A stretch of 63,838 bases of DNA, counting the filler, from Bigelowiella natans CCMP2755 (taxonomy: Eukaryota; Protista; Cercozoa), in the NCBI GenBank assembly GCA_000320545.1. It is 4 parts of 4 records of this genome, joined end to end, with 100 filler letters (N's around TTAATTAATTAA, not from the genome) between each part and the next. Parts side by side here need not be neighbours in the genome. Positions count along the whole stretch, not along the records: positions 1 to 28,846 come from ADNK01001611.1; 3 more parts are not named here. One strand, 5' to 3'. A model generated the notes under the pieces. That model saw only the letters and a list, made by a program, of their open reading frames with translations, made no database searches and was not told the origin of the DNA. The position numbers and the translations under genes are program-made. This document shows positions 5,860-21,799 of the stretch, one piece after another. The first letter of the stretch is position 1, and every line of letters starts with the position of its first letter.

Positions 5860-8800
5860 CTAATCATTCCAACAGACACTTTGTTGAAAGGTCCTGTAAC
5901 TCTCAAACGTCTTTTCATTTGCTTGCTGTTCCTCCGTCTTGCTGTTTTCTTTCACATGATCTGTTGCAACTGGCTTCCTTAGATGCTCGTTTTTGTGCGC
6001 TTTGAACTTGTTGGTCTCTTTTGTCAATGGGCATCCTTCACTCTTTCTCCTCTGATGCTGAGGTGTGTCACCATATCTTCCTCTTCTCACATTCGTTTTG
6101 GCATCTTCTGATGTGCAACCTCCTTGTTGATAGCTAGTGGCTACGTCATTCGCTACGCCTCCCTTTTTCAAAATCACTCGAGATGTCACGACCACAATTT
6201 CTTTACTTTCGTCCGTCTCTTCCATGAGGCAGGGGGATATGATGTAATCAATGGGGGAATTCTCGGTTATTGATGGCTCATGGAGAGGGATGGGAGTATG
6301 ATATTCCTTATTGAAAAGGCCTACTTCTGGTATCTGCAGCGAAAATTTCGGATATTCAAGAACCATGGCCCAAAATACACGAGACAGCTCCCTCAATTTT
6401 ACACGAAGTTTATGTCTCGTTTTCTGGACTTGTCGCTCTGCCTTTGTGCATTCAGTATGCGCCGTTGTGGAAGCATATGGAAAAATTGAGGGCGCAAGCT
6501 TCCTCACTTGCTTGTGCCATCCGAGAAAGTTTTCACCAATAAACCCAGTCGTGATTTCATTAGCAACAGCGCTGATACTGTCACTACTGACACTTCTGGT
6601 TTCTTTTGCAGAAGTAGCACTCCACGGATGATTCCATTCATTGAGAAATGCGTCCTTGATAGCCACTCGCAACGTTTCAGTTGTTGTTGTCGGCGCAAAG
6701 GAGAACGGCTTAATTACCATTTTCATGTACTGGCGAAGGTGGTTTTTGGCGGCTTGGTGCAACCCCAAGACGTATTTCAGCAATTGTTTCCGCCACATCT
6801 TCAGGCTTATCTTGGTCGAAGAATTAGCCCTCGATACATCCCTATGTAGTTTCTTTGAAAGAGGAATCAGAGTGTCAACTTTAGACTTGAAGTCTTGTAT
6901 GAGCTTTCTTTTGGGAGGGAATCCATCTATCCTTCCGGTAAGCCGACTGAACTCCAACGTCCCATACGCAGCGTGAATTTTCTCCAACTCATTGCTCTGA
7001 TGCTCCATCTGCCTTTCGAGTTTCTGGCTGTGACGTTTCAGTTCTTCGTGAGCTATCGCCAGCTTCTGGTACGAGTCCTTCCAGTTGTTGTCAGAGGCAA
7101 ATCGATTGTGGTGCGACTCTAGATCATCATAATCAGCTTTCTGTGCACCGTAATCAGAAATCAGCGATGTACGAGCGTCCGGCAAAGATAGACTCCCTCT
7201 TTTCCAGTCTCCACCACAATCCCCACGACTTTGAGGGGAGATTCGAGCGCTTCGAAAATAGTATAATATCGCGGCGCTTGGAAGGATCTGTAGGGAAGAA
7301 AAAGCCAGAGATAATATTGGCAAAAATCCCATGAATCTTTGTTTTAGATATGATGATCGTCACCTCCTAATCTAATTAGAGCTCGCTCTACTCCTGAATT
7401 AAACGTGGATTGATTTTGGTCGTACTAACCCCTCTTCTCGTGCCCCCCCCCCCCCCAATTCGAGCTCAATGATACTGATATTCGTTACCTCCCAACATAT
7501 ATGCATTATAAACGAAGGAAGGTCAATTTCGGATCGGGGGCTGTTGGCAATTTTTATGTCAAAGAAGCTAGCATCAGCAAAGACCGAAAGGATATGTTGA
7601 TGTGTAAACGCGATGATTGGCCACAACGGCAGGTAAATGACGACGATGATTTTCATAAGAATTAACAAATCATTCTCCACCTACCCATGGTCTGTTTTCA
7701 TGATACAATAAATGCCTCGACTCAGAAACGCTGCCCACGCCAATGCAGTCACCTTAACAAACATATTAGAGTTGGTGGATGATGATGGGACGAGCGCAAA
7801 CGATTCACATGTTATGGATTACAACAGCCAGCTTGCATGGGGCTGGGATAGCTCTCACCACAATTTTCCTCGAAGAACAAGAACGAGCTACGAGAGCCAT
7901 TCCAAAATAGCTGTTTGGTGGTTATGGAGGTGCAATGAGTCCACTCGAAATGATCTTCATGTGATTCATTCTATTGCCACCTAAAAATAGCTGTGAGGAG
8001 AAGATATTCCACTCCAGTTAATCGAGAGAAAGTGTTGCACTCCGCTTCATCTGGATCACACTTTGAAACAATCGCCAAACGTCACACCAGCAAGAAAGGT
8101 GATGTTCTAATTTCATAATTCGAAAATTCATTGCTAGCTTACCATCATGCCAAAAAAAACAGGAGTTAGTGCTGTTGTAACCTGAATTCCAAAGGTCAGG
8201 CTAAAAGCAACACAGTTTGCCACAAAAAACAATCCCCAAATTGCCTAATGTTTCGCAGTAATAGTTTCAAAGATAGACAAAGATATCTCTATATTCTAGA
8301 ACAAGTCTCTATAACATTTCCAAAGATGTAGAGTACGTCTACTTTAGTATTGTTTATCCTCATTACTTGAATGAAATTGTTGCCATGAATAGCACGGTTG
8401 ATGTGCTGGTCAAGGGATCTTTTTGGAAACCGGTTTTCAACACGATGTTGATTTTATTCTGATTCCTTTATTGATTTTTGGTGTTTCTGTTTCTATTACA
8501 ACCTCTATTTTTGCTGGCCAATCCTGCTGATAGAGAAGCTTAGCGTAGAAGACGGCAATTAGGGAAAATGTGGTAAATTGGAGTGCTGAGGGAATCCTCA
8601 GGATGAGGATTTCGGCTACGTTCTGAGAAAAATAACGGCAGCTTTAGCCAGGTTGCCAGGGAGTCAACCATCATCACTGATTTTAGATTCTCGATAGAAA
8701 CCGAGCTAATACTCTTGCAAAATGTGTCGAGGGTAATTACATTTAGCGAGAACTTCTCAGGTACCGGTAGATTGGCCTCAAAAGCAAAGAAGAACGCCCG

Positions 8801-9127
8801 CAAAGCCATCCAAGGAAGTAGAAGGAGTAGGAAAGAAGCTTGAAAACTGTCGAATAAGCTGTGTCTGCAAAATTTGATTCCATCATTTACGAAACCAATC
8901 TTTTCTGCGGGCGTGCAATGTATATCTGCCGGCTACCAGGTCGATTAATCAATGAATTACCCATTGCACACCATCCTGCTGATTTGAAGAAGGGAGCTTA
9001 ACGAAAGTATTGAGTACCTAATATGTCCAAGCCAAAATCATCATTCAGTTATGACCTCGAGATGATTTGTTAAATTGTCTTACAAGAGGGCCAGGGCAAT
9101 GGCCAAACCGGCTTGAGGACTCTCCAT
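5860..9127 (-). CDS. GPR137/TOM1-THH1-like 7TM protein fused to a coiled coil and a MIEAP/GrpE-like C-terminal domain
   Basis: Stitched exons: MESPQAGLAIALAL|LYSILSLSSLLQISRMVCNG|HSLFDSFQASFLLLLLPWMALRAFFFAFE..; AIWGLFFVANCVAFSLTFGIQ; VTALAWAAFLSRGIYCIM; FIMHICWE|ILPSAAILYYFR (phase-0 intron 7288-7488). These resemble GPR137 TM1-2, TM6 and TM7 (WELLPTTLVVYFFR). The large last exon 7287-5860 encodes a heptad-rich coiled coil followed by VFWAMVLEYPKFSL..FNKEYH..IDYIISPCL..VVVTSRV. Confidence 0.7.
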
Positions 9128-9683
9128 CGGTAGTCAATACCCGGTGCTCGATTTTGTAAGCAAAGCCTTTGCGCTTCGATGTATCTATTAGCAATCCAAT
9201 CCTGCCGGTAATAAAATATCGATAGCTACCTTGTAGCCACCTTGTTGCAGGTTGATTTATCCGATTGAGAGGGTGGCGAACGTTTGGCTTGTGCGTCACC
9301 GGATTATGCTGATTGTTGACGCCGAAGCTGACGCCCGTCTGATGACGCCCTGGATTGAGTGAGAAACTTCTTTGGAATCAGTATTCTTTTCTCTGTCGTT
9401 TTTTGAAATTCCCCTTCGTTTTCTGTTATTTTCCTTTTTCGGAAATTATCGGCCAAGGCGTCAGAGAAGGACCGGACCGGGTTGTGGGGTGTTTAGGAGC
9501 ATGTCGTCTCCAATTCTGGTGATATTTTCGACGAAAGCCAGTAGTTACTTGTCGTTTTTATTGTCGCGTGTGTTAAAATCGGTGCAGTTTTTGTAAGATA
9601 GAGATTCATTTGCAGACTTTTTGAATCTGAATTTCCCGTTTGTTTCGGCCGATCTCGTAGCACTGCCAGAACCCAAGCACACC

Positions 9684-10916
9684 ATGAATGGGACCGTGCC
9701 GCGCCTCATCATCGCAATCGATCCTGGAACTTCGGGCATGGGCTTTGCCTACCGGTAGTCTTGATGTCCCTCGATCTGACCCTACTCCCTTGCTGTAACT
9801 TGTCTTCTCCCTAGAAAAGAAAAAGGGGACTATTACCTCCTATCAGTCAATTTGCAGCATCTTCACGTCTTAGATATACAAGCGACAAGGGGGAGGTATC
9901 TACCGACCAAGGCTGGACGAAGAATAAAAGGCCCAAGGAGAAAGTGAGAACAGCGATTTTGGTCGAGGTGAGTCTTACGGTTCCTTCCCTTCCTAAGTAA
10001 GTCATTTTTAATGTAAATGGCCTTTCTTTGTCTCCGTGCTGTTACCTACATGGTACCCCTGATGAAGCTTTTGCTATCCCCTCGGGCATATCGTTGCAAC
10101 AATAAGCACTCCAACCGCTATTTATTAGGAGTGTGATGATGGGAGCTTCAAGGTTGTAGACTGTGGCGAAAACGCACATTCCAATTATATTCGCATTTTA
10201 CACGGGGTCAATAGAAAGAAGACGAAGGAGAGAAAAAAGGAGTGCAAGGGATCTCCAGACAGGTATTCCATGAATAATGAGAGTAACAGTCAAGCTGCGT
10301 GCTTTTCCCGCCATCAAAAAGATTGTATTCGCCGTGTGGTTTAGAATTTACTACGTAACGTACATTCCGTAATTGATAGCATCAGTATTCTTCTTAGTGC
10401 CACCCCCTCCCCCATAGACATCGTTACGCGGCCCGTTCCAACATTGCGGGACAACGCACATTACTCAGGTACTACTACTTCGACCGATTCAAGATGTCCT
10501 TATACCAGAACGACAGCGACGAGAAATCTTGGAGAGATCCAATGGTCAAAGATGTTTCAGGTTATTGCTACGTCGTTTCTCCTTGATAGTTTTGCCGTAG
10601 ACCAATGCCCAGAAGAACGTATACACCAAAAGTAGAAGCAGTAGCAGCGGCTGCTGCTGTTAAAATCGAGTGGGTTATAACCGAGTGTGCTCGGATATTA
10701 CATTTCCCAACGATCGCCGGCAGAATACTCATAGAGCAGATTAGTGACCGATTAAGAATAGCATTTGACTGCACCTATGCGTCGTCGTTTCTGCCTGTAA
10801 GCCAGCATAATTTTGACTACCCATAGGAAGGAGGGAATTCAAAGCCTCAGTTGTGTTTACCTGGTGCATTCGCTGCCTCAAAGATCAAGCATTAAAAAGA
10901 TTGCCAACAAAGTGCA

Positions 10917-10947
<31 letters not shown>

Positions 10948-10986
10948 AATATTTCCCCAACACTACTTAACATATTTACTCAACCA

Positions 10987-11028
<42 letters not shown>

Positions 11029-11495
11029 ATATTATAATATATGTAACATAGATGTATTTTCCTTACAGCGAAGACAAAGATAAGATTCGTTGGGTCATTC
11101 TTGTTCCAGCGATATGGCAGGAACCGGCCAAGAAACTTATGATAAACGCAGCCATCAAAGCTGGTATTCCGCCAAGTCAACTGCAGCTCTGTTTAGAACC
11201 TGAGGTGAGTAAGTAGTCGCAAACCAACATGCTGTCACATTGCTAGAAAAACGCTCTCAGATGAAGATGTAGTCCCTGCTTTCGCTCTCCCCGACAGGCT
11301 CTCATGGCCTCTAAATGTGCTGCACCCCCAATACTATTTCACAGGCAGCTGCAATCGCTACAATCCACGACAGTAGTGTCACCGCTTTGATTGCCAAAGG
11401 AACGAGGTGCTGGAAGAGAGGAAATAGCTGCGAGAAAAGATTCAGAGGCGGGGGAAAGCCTATGGGAAAGCAGCGAGAAGAAATCGGGGATTGGG

Positions 11496-11535
<40 letters not shown>

Positions 11536-11894
11536 GGATTTAAGGATGTAATACTTATAAATCATCTGCCGTGCTCATACTACTGGACGGCATGCCCCTC
11601 CTTATTCTTCTTCTGTTATATTTTGCATATGTGTATACTTGTTGATGTCTTGCCAGATACATGGTTCTCGATGTGGGTGGGGGCACGTGTGATATAACCT
11701 GCCACGAGGTAGTAGTAGTAGTAGTAGTAGTAGTAATCGCCCAATCTGAAGCCATTGACCGTTGGACACAGTCTATCTCAAATATGGCAGCCAGTAAATA
11801 CATCAAATAAAATGGATTACTGAACTAAATTCACCTACGCTCCTCATTCATCTAAGTAATATTCGTCTTGCCTGCGCGCTCTCCCCCCCCCCCC

Positions 11895-11939
<45 letters not shown>

Positions 11940-13040
11940 TTTTTTTTTTTTTTTTTATATTTATATACCCCCCCATATACCCAAGTACCCACCAGTTGAC
12001 ATGGGCGCATTTCCTCAAACCCCAACAAAGGGGACCTGCCCTGAGAGATTTGAAGTAAAGGAAATACGAAAAGTGAATGGTGGAGATTGTGGATCCTGCC
12101 AAATCAATGCTAGATTCGAGCAGATTTTGGCAGAGCGAATCACTGGGGGGAAGAAAAGGTGTGATTGTAGACTGCTTAGAAACCAGCTTTCGCAGCGTCA
12201 CGTTTCGAATTATTTCATTTCCCCTATCCTCCTCCCATCCCACCTCCCCCTATCCTCTCTTTCTCTTTCTTTCTCTTCTTCTCCTACTCCTGAAACTGTG
12301 CCTACGGCAGCTGGAGAACGTTCAAGATGAAATCCCCTCGCGCATACAACGAATTCTGTGAGAATTTCGAGCAATGTAAACTCGAATTTAGTTCTAAAGA
12401 GGAACTCTACATTCCAATCCCCTCCTCCCTAGCCAAACTCTTGCCCAAAGACTATCGCGACGGGATGGAAATCAATGAGGTGCTGAGGTGGTGGCACGAA
12501 TGAAGAGGGGAGGAGGGGGGCATTCGAGGGATATGGAGAAACTCATGCTACCGGTATGTTCCGATCCTGATTTTTTTCCTGATATTACTTGCCAGGATTA
12601 CTTGATTTTGGACAGGGAGTTTGTTTCCAAGTTATTCGACGATGCCTCCATCTTAAAGATCACAAACCTGCTCGCGTGGGTAGAAAGAATTATACAGATC
12701 CTCGAATATTCTTCGAGAATTGACGAGGTGTCATTGCGACGATGTGTAGGAGCTAAATTCGTGTGATGGCAGAGGGCTCGATTTCGTCTTTTTAGCCGGC
12801 GGCTTCGCCAATTCTATCTATCTACGGAGAAAGGTTCAGGATTGTGTTAGCAAGATCTCTTCAACGATTGAGGTAATACAGTTTACAATGAAGAGCGATT
12901 TCGCAAACGCTACTCGACACTTAATTAAATACACCTAACGCTCAAATTCTTCTTCTGACTAACAACAGGTGAAGTACCCTTTGGACGCCTCCATGGCTAT
13001 TTTAAAGGGGGGAGCGATGATGGGAGAGAGTCCCACGGTG

Positions 13041-13075
<35 letters not shown>

Positions 13076-14009
13076 TATAGTAGTAGTTGTAGTAGTAGTA
13101 GTAGGAGGAGGAGGAGGAGGAGGAAAAGGATGGGGATATATTACAGACACATGATTTGTAGTCTTTTCTCAAGTCACCCCCCTCCCCTTCCCCCCTCCTC
13201 TCTAGTCTCTCTCTCTTTCTACCGCTCGCGTCGCGTTTACACATTCCTTGTACACCAGGCGATTATCTCCCGAAAAGCTCGATTCACATACGCTGTTACC
13301 CGCGTCGAGGACTTTGATGTAAGTCGAGGCCATGATGAAAGACGCAGCTACGTCACGAGCGAGGGGCTGAAAAAGATTCGCGTCCTGCGTATTTTGGTAA
13401 ACGAAGGGGAGGATGTTAGGCTGGGGCAAGAGATTTCATCGAAAATGTACTACTCCCCTGCCCAATATATAACATAACAACTATGGTCGATGCTCGAAAG
13501 AAGAAGGCCGTCTTGCTCCATTCCTGCTAGCACAGAGAGTATAGATCCGTATCAACATTCAAATGTTGTTCGGTGCTGACTTTATTGCATATACTGCGTG
13601 CATGCACAATGCAGAAGCAACCCTGAGCCAACGAGCAGGTTGGTAGATGATATTTACCGCTGCATCGGCACGGATATACGGTACGTCATGAGAGGCGTAA
13701 CACACAAGTGACACATGATAATAACAACGATTATCTGATGACGATAGTGCATGCACTGTGGTAGCCTTTTTTAAAAAAAATGGCATTCCAAGCCCCAAAA
13801 GTTGTTTTGTTTCATGGATGTTACTCAGATATCCGGACGAAAAAGACGCCCAGAAACTCGGACAACTTCGCATTAAGCTTGGTCGTTGCCATGCAACGCA
13901 CTGTGCTAATGTCAAGGTAATCTACAAATTTGGAGGCACACACCTATCGATTGAAGCCCTCGATGAAGAAACCGATAAATTGTTTGCCCTTAATCTTGAG
14001 TTCTACTAG
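9684..14009 (+). CDS. HSPA12-type atypical Hsp70 (actin-like ATPase), about 15 exons
   Basis: MNGTVPRLIIAIDPGTSGMGFAY (phosphate-1); YYFDRFKMSLY; IRWVILVPAIWQEPAKKLMINAAIKAGI..LCLEPE|AAA; YMVLDVGGGTCDITCHE (phosphate-2); GGDCGSCQINARF; FLAGGFANSIYL; MAILKGGAMMG; IISRKARFTYAV; VIYKFGGTHLSIEALD..LEFY*. No EEVD tail. Confidence 0.9.
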
Positions 14010-14955: not shown

Positions 14956-17900
14956 TTAGGTCCTTTTGACTTTGAGGACTTCGACTCGAAAGACGGTCGC
15001 CAGCGTGTGCAACCACGCCTTCTGCTGGAACGACAGCCGATCGTTCGGCCCCTTAACCTCCACCAGCTTACACTCGCTCCGCTCCTCATTCCAAAGGAAC
15101 AAGTCGGGAAGGCCCCCGCACCAGTGCTGGTAGTCCTGCGCAAAGCACATGCACACGTGCGCCAACGCCCTCCCTCCTATACACTGGCACAGCTTCGCAA
15201 CGGAGTCAACGTCCCATCTGTCCCATCGTACCCCCCTCACGCGCACTCCTTCCATCCGAGCGAAGGCCTCTCGCGCGATCGACGCAATGGCCTCCTTGTC
15301 CGCACGGCGGAGGAGTTCCAGCCGGCGCTCGATCTTCGCCCTGCGCTTCCGGTAGAAGTCGCACGTGCCCAAATCGAGCGGGGCGTCCTGGAAGCGCGTT
15401 TGGAAGACGTGCGGTATGTCCTCGAAGAGCTGCTCCGCCATGAGTAGGCCAAAGAGGTAGTGGAAGAGGCCATTCTCGCAGTGCACACCCTGCCACTCGC
15501 CGTTCTCCTTGAGCGAGTAGTGCTCGACGGCCAGCGCCTCAACCGATCCAAGCTCATTGTTCCAGGCGAAGAAGTGCGACTTTTGCCCGGTCTGGCAGTT
15601 GGTTGGATTTCCTTCGATCTCGACGGTCACCCAATGCCTCCCCCCCCCCCCCCCGTCCCTCCTCCTCTCCCCCGCCCTCCCGCCTCCGCCTTGCGCCTCC
15701 GCCCTTGCCCGCCACACCCCCCTCCGCCGCCGTCTCCTGCGCAAGTTTTCCCAGCGTTTCAACAGAGACCGGGCAGACAGAGGCCGTGACGTCCTTACGC
15801 TTCCAAAGCCGGAGCGTGCGAGCCTGGAGCTCGAGCAGGTCTCCCGTCTTGACGTGGCCGTCGCGGAGGCCTCTGACCGCCAGCTGGTAAGCTTCCTGGT
15901 GTCGTTTCAGATGCTGGCTGGTGTCGAGTACTAACCGGTTCCACCACCTCCCACGATATGCAGGACACAAGGCCACTGCTCCTCTAGCCACGTCTCGTCG
16001 CTTATTCCGAGAACCCTCTTGCAGACTGCCCTTGTTCCCTTCCCTTCCTCCCACCAGATCCCCCCCCTCCCCCACACTCTTCTTCTTCTTCTCCTCCTCC
16101 TCCTCCTCGTCGTCGTCGTCGCGTAGTTGGAGAAGCTCTCGGAGAACCTCGACTGCGAGTTCATACTCTTTCAGCCTCTCGAGCAACTTCACAATCTGAT
16201 GGCAGACCTTGGCATACACGTATCGAGATCGGAACCTCTCGAAGAAATCGGGGAGGGGGGGCGGAGAGGATGGCGACAGGCCGGTAGAGGTGGCCACACC
16301 CTTCCTATTCCCCTCCTTCGCCTCCTCCTCCTCTTCCTCCTCGTAAAGCCGCCTCCTCGCGTCCTCCAAGACTTCCCTGAGGCGTGTTTGGTCTATGAGG
16401 CGGGTAGGGATGGACTGCGCCTCAATCATCGCAGCCGCAGCCGATGACGACGCGTCTAGATACTCGGGGGCAATGTCGGTGAGGAGGTTGTTGTACGCGT
16501 TGCAGGCTTCGTGGTAGGCGATGAAGGCGCGGCGCGTTGGGAAGACGCTGAGCACGTCGTGCAGCGCGTAGTCCCTGTACCGCACATGGCCAATGGTCTC
16601 CAAGGTCATGAGCGTTGTGGTCTCTTCCCCCTCGTAGCAGTTGAGGAAGAACAGCCTGAACAGCCGATGAGACAGTGACAGCATCGCCGGCGTTAGCTGT
16701 ACCCACTCGCCACAGAACTTCGCAAACGACGCCCGCACGCGAGGGCTGTGGATGAGCCGCGCGCCGAAGAGCTCCCTTTGTGTCAGGAGGTGATCGAGGA
16801 GACCCATGCGCGAGTCGTAGGCCTTGCCGCCTCCACACTTTCGACCGCTTGTTCGTGAATTCCGCCTGTTGTTATTGTTGTTGTTGCTTTTGCTGCTGCC
16901 GCTGTGCCGCGAGTTGATTTTGTAGCCAATGGCCGCCGAGAATGACCGCACAGAGTCCAGGGGAAGCAGAAGGTGCTGCCGGCGGCGCCCTGTTCGTCGC
17001 ATCGCAAGGGGGTGGGGAAAGGAGCAAGCATGGGAAAAGAATGGTCGGATTAGAGAGCTCCCTATGCTATCGATAGGAGGACGAAGGAGAAAGAGAAGAA
17101 GGAAAAACGAATAAATTGTCAGATGTGGTGGTGGTGGCGGCGGTGGTGTTGCAGGCGCTTGAATTGGAAATCGGAGTACGACATAACGGCAGCGGAGAAC
17201 GCCGCTGTGATTTTTGTCCCGTGGGACAGAAAAACGACCGATGTTAAACGACCGTCTCAATTACGAATTCTTTGTTCGTGCAGTCATTTATCACCACCAG
17301 CAATCCCCACCCCCCCCCCCACCAAAAAAACAAAAAATACACTATCATCGCCATAACTCAGAGATGGCATAGCAAACATTGCTCCCACAAAAACAATACA
17401 GCGCAGGAGATATACGACCCGATTTCGACGCGTCGAGCAGCGTAGTGAAGAGCTCCTCCGCGTCGGTCTGCTCGATAGAGGAGCTCTTCCGGACGAACCC
17501 GCCATTCACCAGTTCCTGCACCGCCGCGCCGACATCTTCGACTTCCTTGTACTTCAGCGAGGAGAGTCGAAACCAACGGTCGGAGTGCGTGCGCCGCACC
17601 AGCCGGCAATACAGCAGCTGGGCGGCGCGGGAGAGCTCTTTAAACTTGCCGATGAGGCTCATCTCCGTGTTGTCGAGCAGATGCTCGCCGCGGCAGCGGA
17701 CGAAGTCGGCGATTTCCCAGAAGTGCCTAAGGTACTGGCCCTCTCTCCAGCGCTCGCTTTTCGGTGCCTCACGTTCGCAGATGCGTTGCAGTCTTGCCAG
17801 CGATGCTTTCGTGGCTTCCGAGAGCGATCCTGCGTGTGAGACACGTTGTACAGACACAGGGGGGGAGAGTATCTTTAATGACTTAAAGTGTGGCGAGAAG

Positions 17901-19496
17901 AGGGGGTTCCCTCCTCCTCTTATCGTACACGAGAAGAAGTGAGGAAAGAACAAAAACAAGCTAGCCTTTCGCAAACAACCACCGACATACCGACCGACCT
18001 TCTTCAGCGTAACGAGGACAAGTTATTCTTAGAGTTATCGCGATCTCACGGGACACGATCTCTTGGCCGCTATCATTCTCGCTGCTGCCGATTGAATCAT
18101 GCCTGTCGGGTGACGAGGTAGAATAAGCGGAAGAGGAAGAAGTACTACACCTGGATGAGGAGGAGGAAGAAGCTCTCGCCGAATTCCTGCCGCCGTGGCA
18201 ATTTGGTCCTTCCCCCAGAGACTTTCGCGTCCTAATCTCGTCTGGGCAAGTAAGCTTTCCTTCCACGTGGACAAGGGGTAAATCCCCATCACTGCCATCA
18301 TTCGAACTCTCACCATGCGCCGAAGGAGGTCCTGCCCCCTCCCCGCCCCCTTTCTTCTGGTGCTCGATATGGCCTCCTTCTCTTCTCGTCTTTATCAATA
18401 GTAGAGGGGACAAAACCCGTGCTATAGGGGCCGGGAGGTGACCTACGGCCTCATACTTGGAATTCAGCACCTGGATGGCGTTCGGGTCGACTGTGTTTGT
18501 TGGCTCCCTGCGCAAAAAAAGCGACTGATCGCGAACAACCTCATTCTTTTCGTCGAGAATCAGGGTGGAGTCCGAGAATTTAAGTCCGACGATCACGGTG
18601 AACAATCGCATCTCGCACGCTTTCATTGATTTTATTGCTGCTGTGGCAGCCGCCGCCACCCCCTGAGTACTCGCACTTTGCAAGCGTGCCTTTTCTATAC
18701 CTGGTCTTCGGTGGCCAGTATCACCTCCACATATTGTAGATGACACCGAACCCTGGCTGTCGAAGGTCGCGAAGCTAGTATTCTTCTGGTCACCGGGAAT
18801 GCTCCGTTTAATCGAATCGTTCGTAGTTTCCTTTCCATTCGCTCTGTTCTGTTTGGAGACATTTGGTGTCACAATGGCAGCGATCGTAGGGGTGGGAGCG
18901 TTGGTTTTTCTCCTTAGTTTCGGAGTTTCTTCTTCATGAGTCCGCTGGCGTTTCTTCCCTAGCCAAGCGCGCAGCCTCTCGATCGGTCGGGCGATTGGCG
19001 ACATGTACGAAGGGGGCTGCCCAGGCAGCTCGCCATCCCGGTCACCACCACCACAGTTTGCGCCATTGGATGGATTTATTCGCATCAACGAAACCACCAA
19101 AAGCAAATCCAGAATCAACACCCGTATCGTCGCGGAGGGGGTGCAACCAAGGCTGTTGTGGGAAGGCGTTCCCCACTCCTCAAGGCACGATGTTTTGATC
19201 AGTTCCAACCAACAGAGATGAGTCCCGTTATACGATCGCGACATGATCTTTTGATGGAATTGTAGAGTCGCACGATATAATTTCAGATGGTTTTTGTCGG
19301 AAATTGGTTTTAGGTTTAGTTTTCCCGCCAGGATGCGATGCAGTGCCGGTTCGTCCGCTGTCGGACGATTGTGGTCGCAGCCTCCTTCGGCTTGGTTGAG
19401 GCTGTTCAGAATGTGGCAATTAGAGCATTGAATGATGTTGCTTTTGTTCAACCCTGCACGAAACAATGCACTTCTTCTCGTGTTCTCAACTAACAC
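14956..19496 (-). CDS. FAN1: Fanconi-associated nuclease 1 (HIRAN, helical/TPR and VRR-NUC domains), with an apparent 1-nt frameshift in a C15 run
   Basis: HIRAN: LRREPTNTVDPNAIQV..VGHLPAPIARVL. LYCRLVRR..WFRLSSLKYKEV. TPR-like: RGRWWNRLVLD..HLK. VRR-NUC: SVEALAVEHY, WQGVHCEN, FQTRFQDAPLDL, GGLPDLFLW..LVEVKGPNDRLSFQQKAWL. The true start may be at 19085. Confidence 0.9.
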
Positions 19497-20402: not shown

Positions 20403-21799
20403 TTAGCCTTCCTCCTCCTCAGCTTTAGCCTTTGCCTCAGCCTCAGCTTTTGCCTTGGCCTCCGCCTCCGCCTTCTCTCTGGCTAGCTTCTCCTCAGCGA
20501 GACGCTTCGCTTCTTGTTCGGCAGCAATTCGATCCGCCTCCTCCTGCTGCTTGACCTCCTCATTGATCTTCACAAATGCATCCTTCATGAGCGCCGTGAT
20601 TGTCTGGCGAGCCGCAGCAGAATTCTGAAGCCTTGATCTCGTCTGCTCCATGATCCAGGGTAAGAATCCCTCAACGACCTGCTTTCTGATGGGCTCCTCG
20701 ATCTTGCCTTCTTTCTCCAAGTTAACGAAGACGACGTCCTCAGCACCGGCAAGCAGCTGCTTGGCGAGCAGGCGAGCCTTCGCCTTTTCGGCGGCGGCCT
20801 TTTGCTTTTCTTCAAAGTCTTTGCCTTGTTTGATCCGTCGTTCTTTCTCCTCAACTCTTCGCTTCTCAGCAGCTTCTAATCTCTGCACCTCTGCTAGCCT
20901 CGTGTTTCTCTTCTGTTCGAAGTCAGCTTTATGTTGCTTGAGCTCTTTCAGCTCCTCTTCTTCTAGGACCTGGAAGGAGGGGGGGAAAGAGGATAGATAG
21001 GATACATTTTCAGTATGGGCTACTGATATTGTGTGCATAAGCAAATCTGTAGTGCGCGCTCTCATTCGTATTCTTTCCGCTAGGACCTCACTTACCGCCG
21101 CATATACACACGCATAAGATATTATTGATAGACTCCCAGAGTATATTTTTTTGTTCACTAATCTGCATTTTATTGTGTATGAAAAAGATTTTGTTCCTTC
21201 TTTCCCAAAATGATTCTTGTTGCATTCTGCACGTGGTATGAACATTGTTTCCATTGATTTTCTCGCACGGCTAAACACAAGGCGGCACTCACCTCCATGA
21301 GCGCATGGTCCAGACTTTTCCCAATGAGCACTTCGAGTATAGGCTCCACTTCGAGGTCAAAATCGAACAAGTCGCCAGGCAGAATCTCTGTGGCTTTACT
21401 TACACCAGATGGTTTCGGCTTGAATAGTGGAGCGGTCGGGTAGTCAAGTAAATGATCTGTCTGCGTGGAAATCTCGGCCTCGTATGGCTTGTCGTGTAGC
21501 TCCTCCAGGAAATTGTCCGTTTGAGCTTCGGTGTGTTTGCGCCCTGGTACGGGTTCGGGCGTGGAGGACCGTGGGATTGGTTTGCTCAAGCGTTTTTTTC
21601 GTGTATTCCTCCCAATCTTTTGTGTCATTTGCATCTGACGCACAGGTACAGGCATTGCGTATGTGTTCCCTCGAATGACACGAGGGTCAAACATGATATT
21701 TCCAGCGCCCGATTCCCCCATATCGTCATCCCTGTACTTCTTGCGGTTGGTGTTCCTGACAGCACGTGGTGCCGATTGGAAGGTATATTGACCCTCCAT
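20403..21799 (-). CDS. RSP3: Flagellar radial spoke protein 3 (2 exons, intron 20970-21292)
   Basis: NIMFDPRVIRGNTYA, PVPGRKHTEAQTDNFLEEL, PGDLFDFDLEVEPILEVLIGKSLDHALME|VLEEEEL..RNTRLAEVQRLE, FLPWI. Canonical phase-0 GT-AG intron. Confidence 0.95.

What the first reader, a model, noticed from the sequence alone, without database searches (positions are those of the whole stretch)
5860..14009. Candidate two-gene system: 7TM-MIEAP/GrpE-like protein head-to-head with an HSPA12-type Hsp70
Seen in sequence: two divergent genes whose start codons (9127 on minus, 9684 on plus) are about 556 bp apart. One is an atypical HSPA12-type Hsp70; the other is a membrane protein whose cytosolic tail is a long coiled coil followed by a beta-rich W-x-M..P..F..Y(H)..P.L..V..V motif. 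Established: GrpE, the DnaK nucleotide-exchange factor, is a coiled coil plus a small beta domain, and HSPA12 proteins lack the canonical lid/EEVD and have poorly defined co-factors. Inference: the tail resembles the MIEAP(SPATA18)/IRKI C-terminal domain and may be GrpE-like. The pair could be a co-regulated DnaK-GrpE-like switch in which a 7TM sensor activates a dedicated Hsp70 at an endomembrane, for signalling, organelle quality control or innate immunity. Caveat: divergent pairs are common in this window, so orientation alone is weak evidence.
Basis: partly seen in the sequence, partly recalled or inferred. Interest (0 to 1): 0.85.

Follow-up and report, generated by a model that had tools for sequence, protein, structure and literature searches.

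The report
Membrane protein and Hsp70 neighbour genes
Two real, expressed neighbouring genes of the alga Bigelowiella natans, a TOM1-type seven-helix membrane protein with a probably MIEAP-like tail and an HSPA12-type Hsp70, share a short promoter gap, but nothing shows that they form a GrpE-like chaperone switch.

Summary
The window is a whole contig of Bigelowiella natans. On the minus strand lies JGI model 137136 (695 aa, 10 exons, ATG 9127, stop 5860). It has a THH1/TOM1/TOM3 seven-helix domain and a 460-aa tail encoded in one exon. On the plus strand lies a 16-exon HSPA12-type Hsp70 (ATG 9684, stop 14009). The start codons are 556 bp apart. RNA contigs from three studies show both genes spliced, and their transcript ends lie no more than about 190 bp apart.

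Protein-language-model neighbours of the tail are overwhelmingly MIEAP-domain clusters (score 0.93), followed by GIL1/IRKI-C. However, no Pfam model (MIEAP, GIL1_IRKI_C, GrpE) matches the tail. An exhaustive phmmer search found no homologue, and AlphaFold models were unusable. Nothing supports GrpE likeness.

The linkage is not recurrent. The other HSPA12-like genes sit next to unrelated genes, and the other TOM1-like gene has a short tail and no Hsp70 neighbour.

A rare TGACGCC cluster fills the promoter gap and recurs upstream of the HSPA12 paralogue, so it probably belongs to HSPA12 regulation.

Verdict: ordinary divergent neighbours, one with an unusual domain fusion. Functional coupling is unproven.

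The parts
5860..9127 (-). Coding region (10 exons) of the TOM1/THH1-type 7TM protein with a long tail (JGI Bigna1 137136, P0001, 695 aa). The transcript 5' end reaches at least 9295.
   Evidence: 100% match to P0001. Exon map. CT..AC joints and RNA contigs reaching 9278-9295 in runs X1, X4 and X6.
7489..9127 (-). Exons 1-9, which encode most of the THH1/TOM1/TOM3 seven-helix domain. The domain covers residues 6-233, and TM7 finishes in exon 10.
   Evidence: PF06454 at E=5.5e-11 and 42.8 bits against a cut-off of 25. Hydropathy peaks.
6928..7095 (-). Coiled-coil-like long helix of the tail (about residues 285-340).
   Evidence: This is the best-supported part of the AF2 model: helix 287-337, pLDDT 65-74. 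Weak leucine-zipper-type Pfam hits. The only distant database hit is a coiled-coil protein, P0002.
6073..6687 (-). Candidate divergent MIEAP-like domain (residues 421-625). It includes the W-x-M...P motif that starts at nt 6375.
   Evidence: In the ESM Atlas feature search of residues 420-630, 23 of 30 nearest named clusters are PF16026 MIEAP, with scores of 0.92-0.93 and 185-189 shared features. GIL1_IRKI_C follows at 0.80. No Pfam hit.
5863..6072 (-). Very hydrophilic, probably disordered C-terminal end (residues 626-695).
   Evidence: Kyte-Doolittle mean -1.71, with 13 K+R and 11 D+E. pLDDT about 30.
9296..9483 (.). Gap between the two transcripts, a putative bidirectional promoter. It holds TGACGCC at 9317, 9329 and 9343 (+) and at 9457 (-).
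   Evidence: RNA contig ends. Four of the six TGACGCC sites in the window lie here. A same-strand triple occurs at only two loci in the 91-Mb genome.
9684..14009 (+). Coding region (about 16 exons) of an HSPA12-type atypical Hsp70. The transcript starts at or before 9484.
   Evidence: Motifs. P0004 exon map. GT..AG joints. Match to HSPA12A at E=7e-36. 40-55% identity, exon by exon, to the paralogue on C804.
9501..9596 (+). 31-codon upstream ORF inside the 5' leader of the Hsp70 gene.
   Evidence: Read from the sequence. The leader is covered by RNA contigs at 9484-9657 and 9489-9753. Function not tested.

Best explanation
These are two separate nuclear genes of Bigelowiella natans, transcribed divergently from a gap of at most about 190 bp.

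Gene A encodes a TOM1/THH1-family seven-helix membrane protein. The family is known from plant endomembranes. This copy alone has acquired a 460-aa tail, probably cytosolic, made of a coiled-coil helix, a helical-then-strand region that is probably a very divergent MIEAP / GIL1-IRKI-C type domain, and a hydrophilic disordered end. I infer that the tail self-associates through the coiled coil. I also infer that its MIEAP-like part docks lipid or a partner protein at the membrane, as proposed for the structured C-terminal half of human Mieap.

Gene B encodes a cytosolic HSPA12-type Hsp70 with intact ATP-binding motifs and no EEVD end. Its promoter carries a rare cluster of TGACGCC sites, which is also found upstream of its intronless paralogue. 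The cluster is therefore most likely an HSPA12 regulatory element.

Gene A probably shares some regulation simply because it shares the promoter gap. The adjacency itself is most likely incidental in a compact genome. There is no evidence of a GrpE-like nucleotide-exchange function.

Shown: the gene models, expression and splicing, the family assignments of the 7TM domain and the Hsp70, the absence of recurrent linkage, and the motif cluster.
Inferred: MIEAP likeness, cytosolic topology of the tail, the roles of the tail, and shared regulation.
For: - Gene models and expression.
- 7TM family.
- HSPA12 type.
- ATP-binding motifs (IDPGTSG, EPE-AAA, DVGGGT, LAGGFA) read.
- The tail is an orphan by sequence. 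The only hit in 5.8 billion proteins is the protein itself. The exhaustive phmmer search gave one coiled-coil hit. There is no paralogue in the genome.
- MIEAP-like by language-model features.
- Human Mieap has coiled coils, then a structured hydrophobic C-terminal half proposed to bind phospholipid, then a basic disordered end (PMC10845071).
- The 7TM paralogue on C221 has only about 60 aa after TM7 and no Hsp70 neighbour.
- The HSPA12 paralogue on C804 sits head to head with a CobW GTPase.
- All three loci inspected closely are head-to-head pairs less than 1 kb apart (window; C804; C1356).
- TGACGCC cluster.
Against: - The MIEAP assignment rests on an embedding search that has no alignment or E-value and was not calibrated for parts of proteins. 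Pfam PF16026 does not match, even at E up to 10.
- Contig depths of the two genes are similar in each of three runs. That would also fit real co-regulation and leaves room for a functional link.
- The tail and the Hsp70 are probably both cytosolic, so a physical contact is not excluded.
- Linkage could not be tested in any other chlorarachniophyte genome.
Confidence: 0.7

Rival explanations
1. The tail acts like GrpE: a coiled-coil dimer plus a small beta domain that opens the nucleotide cleft of the neighbouring HSPA12-type Hsp70. The pair would then form a dedicated sensor-chaperone switch at an endomembrane.
For: The genes are divergent, with transcript ends no more than about 190 bp apart and similar contig depths. 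Low-confidence secondary structure shows long helices followed by four short strands. Both products are probably cytosolic (inference from the hydropathy and the N-terminus read).
Against: No GrpE (PF01025) signal at E up to 10. No GrpE cluster among the 30 nearest Atlas neighbours. No usable model to compare folds. The tail has no detectable orthologue or paralogue, so it is not a conserved co-chaperone. The pairing is absent at the other HSPA12-like and TOM1-like loci.
Confidence: 0.05
2. The two genes belong to one stress or defence regulon driven by the TGACGCC cluster. The MIEAP-like tail recruits or is serviced by the HSPA12-type ATPase at a membrane, without any nucleotide-exchange role.
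For: The TGACGCC cluster sits in the shared gap and upstream of the HSPA12 paralogue. The only other same-strand triple in the genome sits between two divergent AIG1-family GTPase genes. Depths are similar in three runs. Atlas MIEAP clusters are commonest in Mollusca. The closest named HSPA12 hits are also mostly molluscan.
Against: No expression series was available, and depth from contigs is a poor measure. The other loci with tandem motifs carry unrelated orphan ORFs. The partner of the paralogue is a CobW GTPase rather than a membrane protein, so the motif tracks HSPA12 and not the pair. Six HSPA12 loci examined in a brown alga, a green alga and bivalves showed no MIEAP or TOM1 neighbour. 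Four of them had no other called gene within 10 kb, so they were uninformative.
Confidence: 0.15
3. The tail is not MIEAP-related at all. It is a fast-evolving, lineage-specific coiled-coil and low-complexity extension, and the language-model neighbours reflect composition only.
For: No HMM or phmmer signal. PF16026 is absent from the six-frame genome search. AF2 pLDDT is below 50 over the region. The Atlas tool states that 4-10% of shuffled proteins reach 0.9 and that parts of proteins were not calibrated.
Against: Two queries (residues 270-630 and 420-630) both gave MIEAP in 22-23 of 30 neighbours with 185-193 shared features. That is above the 170 that the tool associates with true family members. 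The related plant family GIL1_IRKI_C came next.
Confidence: 0.3

Closest known systems
Plant TOM1/TOM3/THH1 seven-helix endomembrane proteins (Pfam PF06454)
   Same: The N-terminal 233 residues match the family model above its cut-off and show the expected run of hydrophobic helices.
   Different: Plant members, and the B. natans paralogue on C221, end shortly after TM7. This protein carries a further 460 residues.
MIEAP / SPATA18 and its C-terminal MIEAP domain (PF16026); plant GIL1/IRKI C-terminal domain (PF24994)
   Same: The order of parts is the same as described for human Mieap: coiled coil, then a structured region, then a hydrophilic charged disordered end. The nearest language-model neighbours are MIEAP clusters, followed by GIL1_IRKI_C.
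   Different: No HMM match. The domain is fused to a membrane domain rather than being soluble. Mieap orthologues were reported in metazoans and not in fungi, and no other PF16026 match was found in this genome.
HSPA12A/HSPA12B atypical Hsp70s
   Same: End-to-end alignment that includes the family-specific C-terminal part. The ATP-binding motifs are kept and there is no EEVD end.
   Different: Only 27% identical to the vertebrate protein. The product P0004, which lacks its 5' part, gets no PF00012 hit of its own. The gene has about 16 exons, whereas its paralogue has none.
GrpE nucleotide-exchange factor
   Same: Only a generic resemblance: long helices followed by a short strand-rich stretch (low-confidence model).
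   Different: No sequence, profile or embedding similarity. No evidence of a dimeric four-helix bundle. Not conserved.

Membership tests
THH1/TOM1/TOM3 7TM family (PF06454) | Match to the family HMM above the curated cut-off | tested here: met
   42.8 bits against a cut-off of 25, E=5.5e-11, residues 6-233 on profile positions 17-259 of 273.
THH1/TOM1/TOM3 7TM family (PF06454) | Seven hydrophobic helices | tested here: met
   Six peaks at or above 1.5 on a 19-residue Kyte-Doolittle window, plus a weaker seventh at residues 212-232 that lies inside the HMM match.
MIEAP domain (PF16026) | Match to the family HMM (cut-off 27 bits) | tested here: not met
   No hit at E up to 10 for the whole protein or for six sub-ranges. 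No hit in the six-frame genome search.
MIEAP domain (PF16026) | Similarity seen by methods beyond HMMs (embedding or fold) | tested here: inconclusive
   Atlas features gave 22 of 30 and 23 of 30 MIEAP clusters at 0.92-0.93. The fold could not be tested because the AF2 models had pLDDT 41 and 38.
GIL1/IRKI C-terminal domain (PF24994) | Match to the family HMM | tested here: not met
   No hit. The Atlas neighbour score is only 0.80, which is a lead at most.
GrpE (PF01025) | Match to the family HMM | tested here: not met
   No hit at E up to 10. No GrpE among the Atlas neighbours.
GrpE (PF01025) | Nucleotide-exchange activity on, and binding to, an Hsp70 nucleotide-binding domain | not testable with these tools
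   This needs a multimer prediction or a biochemical assay.
HSPA12 subfamily of Hsp70 | Full-length similarity to named HSPA12 proteins, including the non-canonical C-terminal part | tested here: met
   P0004 against HSPA12A P0013: E=7e-36, residues 1-394 on 160-562. The paralogue hits HSPA12A/B-like proteins at 1e-48 to 1e-39 with 86-99% coverage.
HSPA12 subfamily of Hsp70 | Actin-like ATPase motifs of Hsp70 (phosphate 1, phosphate 2, adenosine) | tested here: met
   IAIDPGTSG, VLDVGGGTCD and FLAGGFANS were read. PF00012 is at the cut-off for the paralogue (20.6 bits) and above it for the relatives. The 5'-partial P0004 itself has no PF00012 hit.
Conserved two-gene system | The same two families adjacent at other loci or in other genomes | tested here: not met
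   Within the genome, HSPA12-like loci C804 and C137 and the TOM1-like locus C221 lack the partner. Other chlorarachniophyte genomes were not available.

The most novel reading that the evidence does not exclude
The TOM1-type membrane protein with its MIEAP-like tail and the HSPA12-type ATPase are co-regulated through the rare TGACGCC promoter cluster. They would form part of a protist stress or defence programme that also includes AIG1-family GTPases, with the tail anchoring or regulating the atypical Hsp70 at an endomembrane. That would give HSPA12 proteins their first dedicated partner.
Probability: 0.12. Interest if true: 0.6.

Novelty: new variant of a known kind. Interest (0 to 1): 0.3.

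Why it matters
HSPA12 proteins have no defined co-factors, and the cellular role of TOM1-type membrane proteins is unknown. A real partnership would therefore be informative, but the evidence here does not show one.

What stands:
- A previously undescribed fusion of a TOM1-type seven-helix domain with a probable MIEAP-like tail in a rhizarian alga.
- A rare promoter motif shared by two HSPA12 paralogues, which gives a handle on how these atypical Hsp70 genes are controlled.

Tried and rejected
- Pfam scans of the tail, whole and in six pieces, gave nothing relevant.
- Six-frame genome searches with PF16026 found nothing. PF00012 and PF06454 did not hit this locus, because the exons are short and divergent.
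- PF27607, which is listed for P0001 in the precomputed table, is not in the local Pfam, so its name stays unknown.
- Word-indexed searches with the last exon and with the tail found only the protein itself. The exhaustive phmmer search found one spurious coiled-coil protein and did not return the protein's own cluster.
- Two single-sequence AlphaFold runs gave pLDDT 41 and 38, so no fold search was run.
- I obtained no MIEAP sequences by reference, so I could not run a profile-profile comparison.
- Neighbourhoods of HSPA12 genes in Ectocarpus, Gonium and four bivalves were empty or unrelated within 10 kb, and a fifth bivalve look-up found no record.
- There is no canonical heat-shock element in the promoter gap.
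- Literature searches linking MIEAP with HSPA12, or MIEAP with GIL1/IRKI, returned nothing.
I used the exons by reference, the database transcript product P0004 and the intronless paralogue instead. In one script I concatenated exon 1 with candidate second exons only to check the reading frame. The exon 1-2 acceptor stays unresolved, with 9874 fitting the paralogue best.
Full report
**Origin and setting.** The window is the whole of contig C2126 (28,846 bp) of a 91.4-Mb assembly in 3,736 contigs. The 490-aa ORF at 5860-7332 is 100% identical to eukprot jgi/Bigna1/137136, so the organism is the chlorarachniophyte alga Bigelowiella natans. The other genes on the contig are unrelated housekeeping genes. 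A FAN1 nuclease with HIRAN, HTH, TPR and VRR-NUC domains lies at 14956-19496 on the minus strand. Radial spoke protein 3 lies at 20403-21799 on the minus strand.

**The minus-strand gene.** P0001 (695 aa) maps exactly onto 10 exons from ATG 9127 to the stop at 5860, all with GT..AG-type borders.
- Logan contigs of three runs from three studies carry the spliced forms. CT..AC joints at 7287|7489, 7748|7855, 7910|7981, 8060|8182, 8243|8502, 8864|8961 and 9014|9081 confirm the junctions. One 2,299-nt contig runs from the tail exon to 9295. The runs are only guessed to be RNA, but intron-less contigs can hardly be genomic DNA.
- Residues 6-233 match the THH1/TOM1/TOM3 domain (PF06454, 42.8 bits against a cut-off of 25).
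- Hydropathy shows six strong helices and one weaker helix.
- The stretch just after TM7 contains several arginines, and the protein starts directly with TM1. I therefore infer that the tail is cytosolic.

**The tail (residues 236-695, one exon).**
- It has no Pfam match, whole or in pieces, at E up to 10. That includes MIEAP, GIL1_IRKI_C and GrpE.
- It has no paralogue in the genome.
- The only hit among 5.8 billion proteins is the protein itself. In an exhaustive phmmer scan of 1.84 billion cluster representatives there was one hit (E=3e-4). That hit is a generic coiled-coil protein aligned to the coiled-coil stretch. The scan did not return the query's own cluster, so own-genome records seem to be withheld.
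- Single-sequence AlphaFold models were poor (pLDDT 41 and 38). I did not use them for fold searches. Their secondary structure, for what it is worth, gives a long helix at 287-337 (the only part with pLDDT 65-74), further helices up to residue 531, and four short strands at 566-594.
- The last 70 residues are very hydrophilic.

**MIEAP likeness.** The ESM Atlas feature search gave a clear but alignment-free signal.
- For residues 270-630, 22 of the 30 nearest clusters carry PF16026 (score 0.93, 187 shared features).
- For residues 420-630, restricted to named clusters, 23 of 30 are MIEAP (0.92-0.93, 185-189 shared features). A GIL1_IRKI_C cluster follows at 0.80.
- The tool's own calibration says shared counts above 170 are typical of true family members. 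It also says 4-10% of shuffled proteins reach 0.9, and that parts of proteins were not calibrated.
- Human Mieap is described as two coiled coils with disordered regions, a structured hydrophobic C-terminal half proposed to bind phospholipid, and a basic disordered end (PMC10845071). The order of parts in the tail is the same.

I rate 'divergent MIEAP-type domain' at about 0.7. Strict membership of PF16026 was tested and not met. No method gave any sign of GrpE.

**The plus-strand gene.**
- The ATG at 9684 opens straight into IAIDPGTSG.
- An MMETSP transcript product, P0004 (395 aa, lacking its 5' part), maps onto eleven exons from 11139 to 14006, at 98-100% identity in most of them.
- GT..AG joints in the RNA contigs cover 9965|10127, 10259|10466, 10558|10825, 11202|11343, 11404|11655, 12156|12309, 12477|12594 and 12678|12749.
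- That gives about 16 exons. Only the acceptor of exon 2 is unresolved, and 9874 fits the paralogue best.
- P0004 aligns end to end with a fish HSPA12A (E=7e-36, 27% identity), including the non-canonical C-terminal part.
- An intronless paralogue on contig C804 is 40-55% identical exon by exon. Its named database hits are HSPA12A/B-like proteins of bivalves and fish (1e-48 to 1e-39, 86-99% coverage).
- The ATP-binding motifs are intact, and the protein ends in LEFY rather than EEVD.

The HSPA12 call is therefore confirmed.

**The pairing.**
- The start codons are 556 bp apart. RNA contigs of gene A reach 9278-9295, and those of gene B begin at 9484-9489. The untranscribed gap is thus at most about 190 bp, which makes a bidirectional promoter.
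- Contig depths of the two genes are similar in each run: X1 about 59-76 against 51-79, X4 about 16-38 against 13-19, X6 79 against 44-73. This is a poor measure and rests on three points only.
- The linkage is not repeated. The genome holds two further HSPA12-like loci. C804 sits head to head with a CobW GTPase, and C137 is a fragment on a 9-kb contig. It holds one further TOM1-like gene, on C221.
- The C221 copy is 45-80% identical exon by exon in the 7TM part but ends about 60 residues after TM7. It has no Hsp70-like neighbour within the 18 kb fetched.
- HSPA12 loci in Ectocarpus, Gonium and four bivalves showed no TOM1 or MIEAP neighbour. Most of them were simply empty within 10 kb.

**A promoter element.**
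- Four of the six TGACGCC sites in the window lie in the transcript gap, at 9317, 9329 and 9343 on the plus strand and 9457 on the minus strand.
- In 10 kb around the C804 paralogue, the only three TGACGCC sites, plus one TGACGC, lie 60-120 bp upstream of its ATG.
- Genome-wide, tandem pairs occur at only nine loci, close to the reversed-pattern control count of 8 matches against 14. Two of the nine loci are the two HSPA12 promoters.
- A same-strand triple occurs only here and on C1356, where it lies between two divergent AIG1-family GTPase genes, one of them fused to a DEAD-type helicase.
- The motif follows HSPA12 whatever the neighbour is. I therefore read it as an HSPA12 regulatory element, with a TGACG core that suggests bZIP-type binding (from general knowledge, untested). 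It may incidentally drive gene A as well.
- There is no canonical heat-shock element in the gap.

**Verdict.** The family guesses for the Hsp70 and the 7TM domain are right, and the MIEAP-like reading of the tail is plausible but unproven. The GrpE analogy and the 'two-gene system' have no support. The most likely account is two independent genes sharing a compact bidirectional promoter, one of them carrying an unusual domain fusion. A co-regulated membrane-anchoring role for the tail towards the Hsp70 is not excluded (about 0.12-0.15). A GrpE-like exchange function is unlikely (about 0.05).

Noticed in passing
window 9317-9463; L001 7547-7603 (G000:C804); L008 4901-4961 (G000:C1356:11900-11960): Clusters of the heptamer TGACGCC lie in the promoter gap of this locus and 60-120 bp upstream of the intronless HSPA12 paralogue. 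A five-fold cluster lies between two divergent AIG1-family GTPase genes. Tandem pairs occur at only about nine loci in the 91-Mb genome. This is a possible stress or defence cis-element.
   Followed up: partly
window 9501-9596 (+): A 31-codon upstream ORF lies in the 5' leader of the HSPA12-like gene, inside RNA contigs that start at about 9484.
   Followed up: no
L001 7664-9490 (G000:C804:11663-13489): An intronless HSPA12-like paralogue contrasts with about 16 exons in the window's copy. It sits head to head with a CobW/HypB/UreG-type GTPase gene (L001 5431-6867, minus strand).
   Followed up: partly
L002 6605-8772 (G000:C221), minus strand: A second TOM1/THH1-like gene has the same exon pattern but only about 60 residues after TM7, including a run of six cysteines. 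So the long tail is specific to the window's copy.
   Followed up: partly
window 14956-19496 (-) and 20403-21799 (-): A FAN1-type nuclease gene with an N-terminal HIRAN domain in addition to the HTH, TPR and VRR-NUC domains, and a radial spoke protein 3 gene. The FAN1 region is GC-rich (0.53-0.63, against about 0.45 elsewhere).
   Followed up: partly
window 10909-11042, 11490-11540, 11699-11743, 11897-11960, 13040-13120: Introns of the HSPA12-like gene are full of microsatellites ((TA)n, (CA)n, (GA)n and GTT/GTA repeats). The reads tool skipped three of these stretches as repeats.
   Followed up: no
P0001 and P0004 (precomputed Pfam columns): The database lists PF27607.1 for the 7TM-tail protein and PF27033.1 (DUF8340) for the HSPA12-like product. 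Both are newer than the local Pfam copy. PF27607 may cover the tail, and its identity should be looked up.
   Followed up: partly
window 12474-12479: The MMETSP transcript product reads I-D-E where the genome encodes I-N-E. This is probably a strain polymorphism.
   Followed up: no
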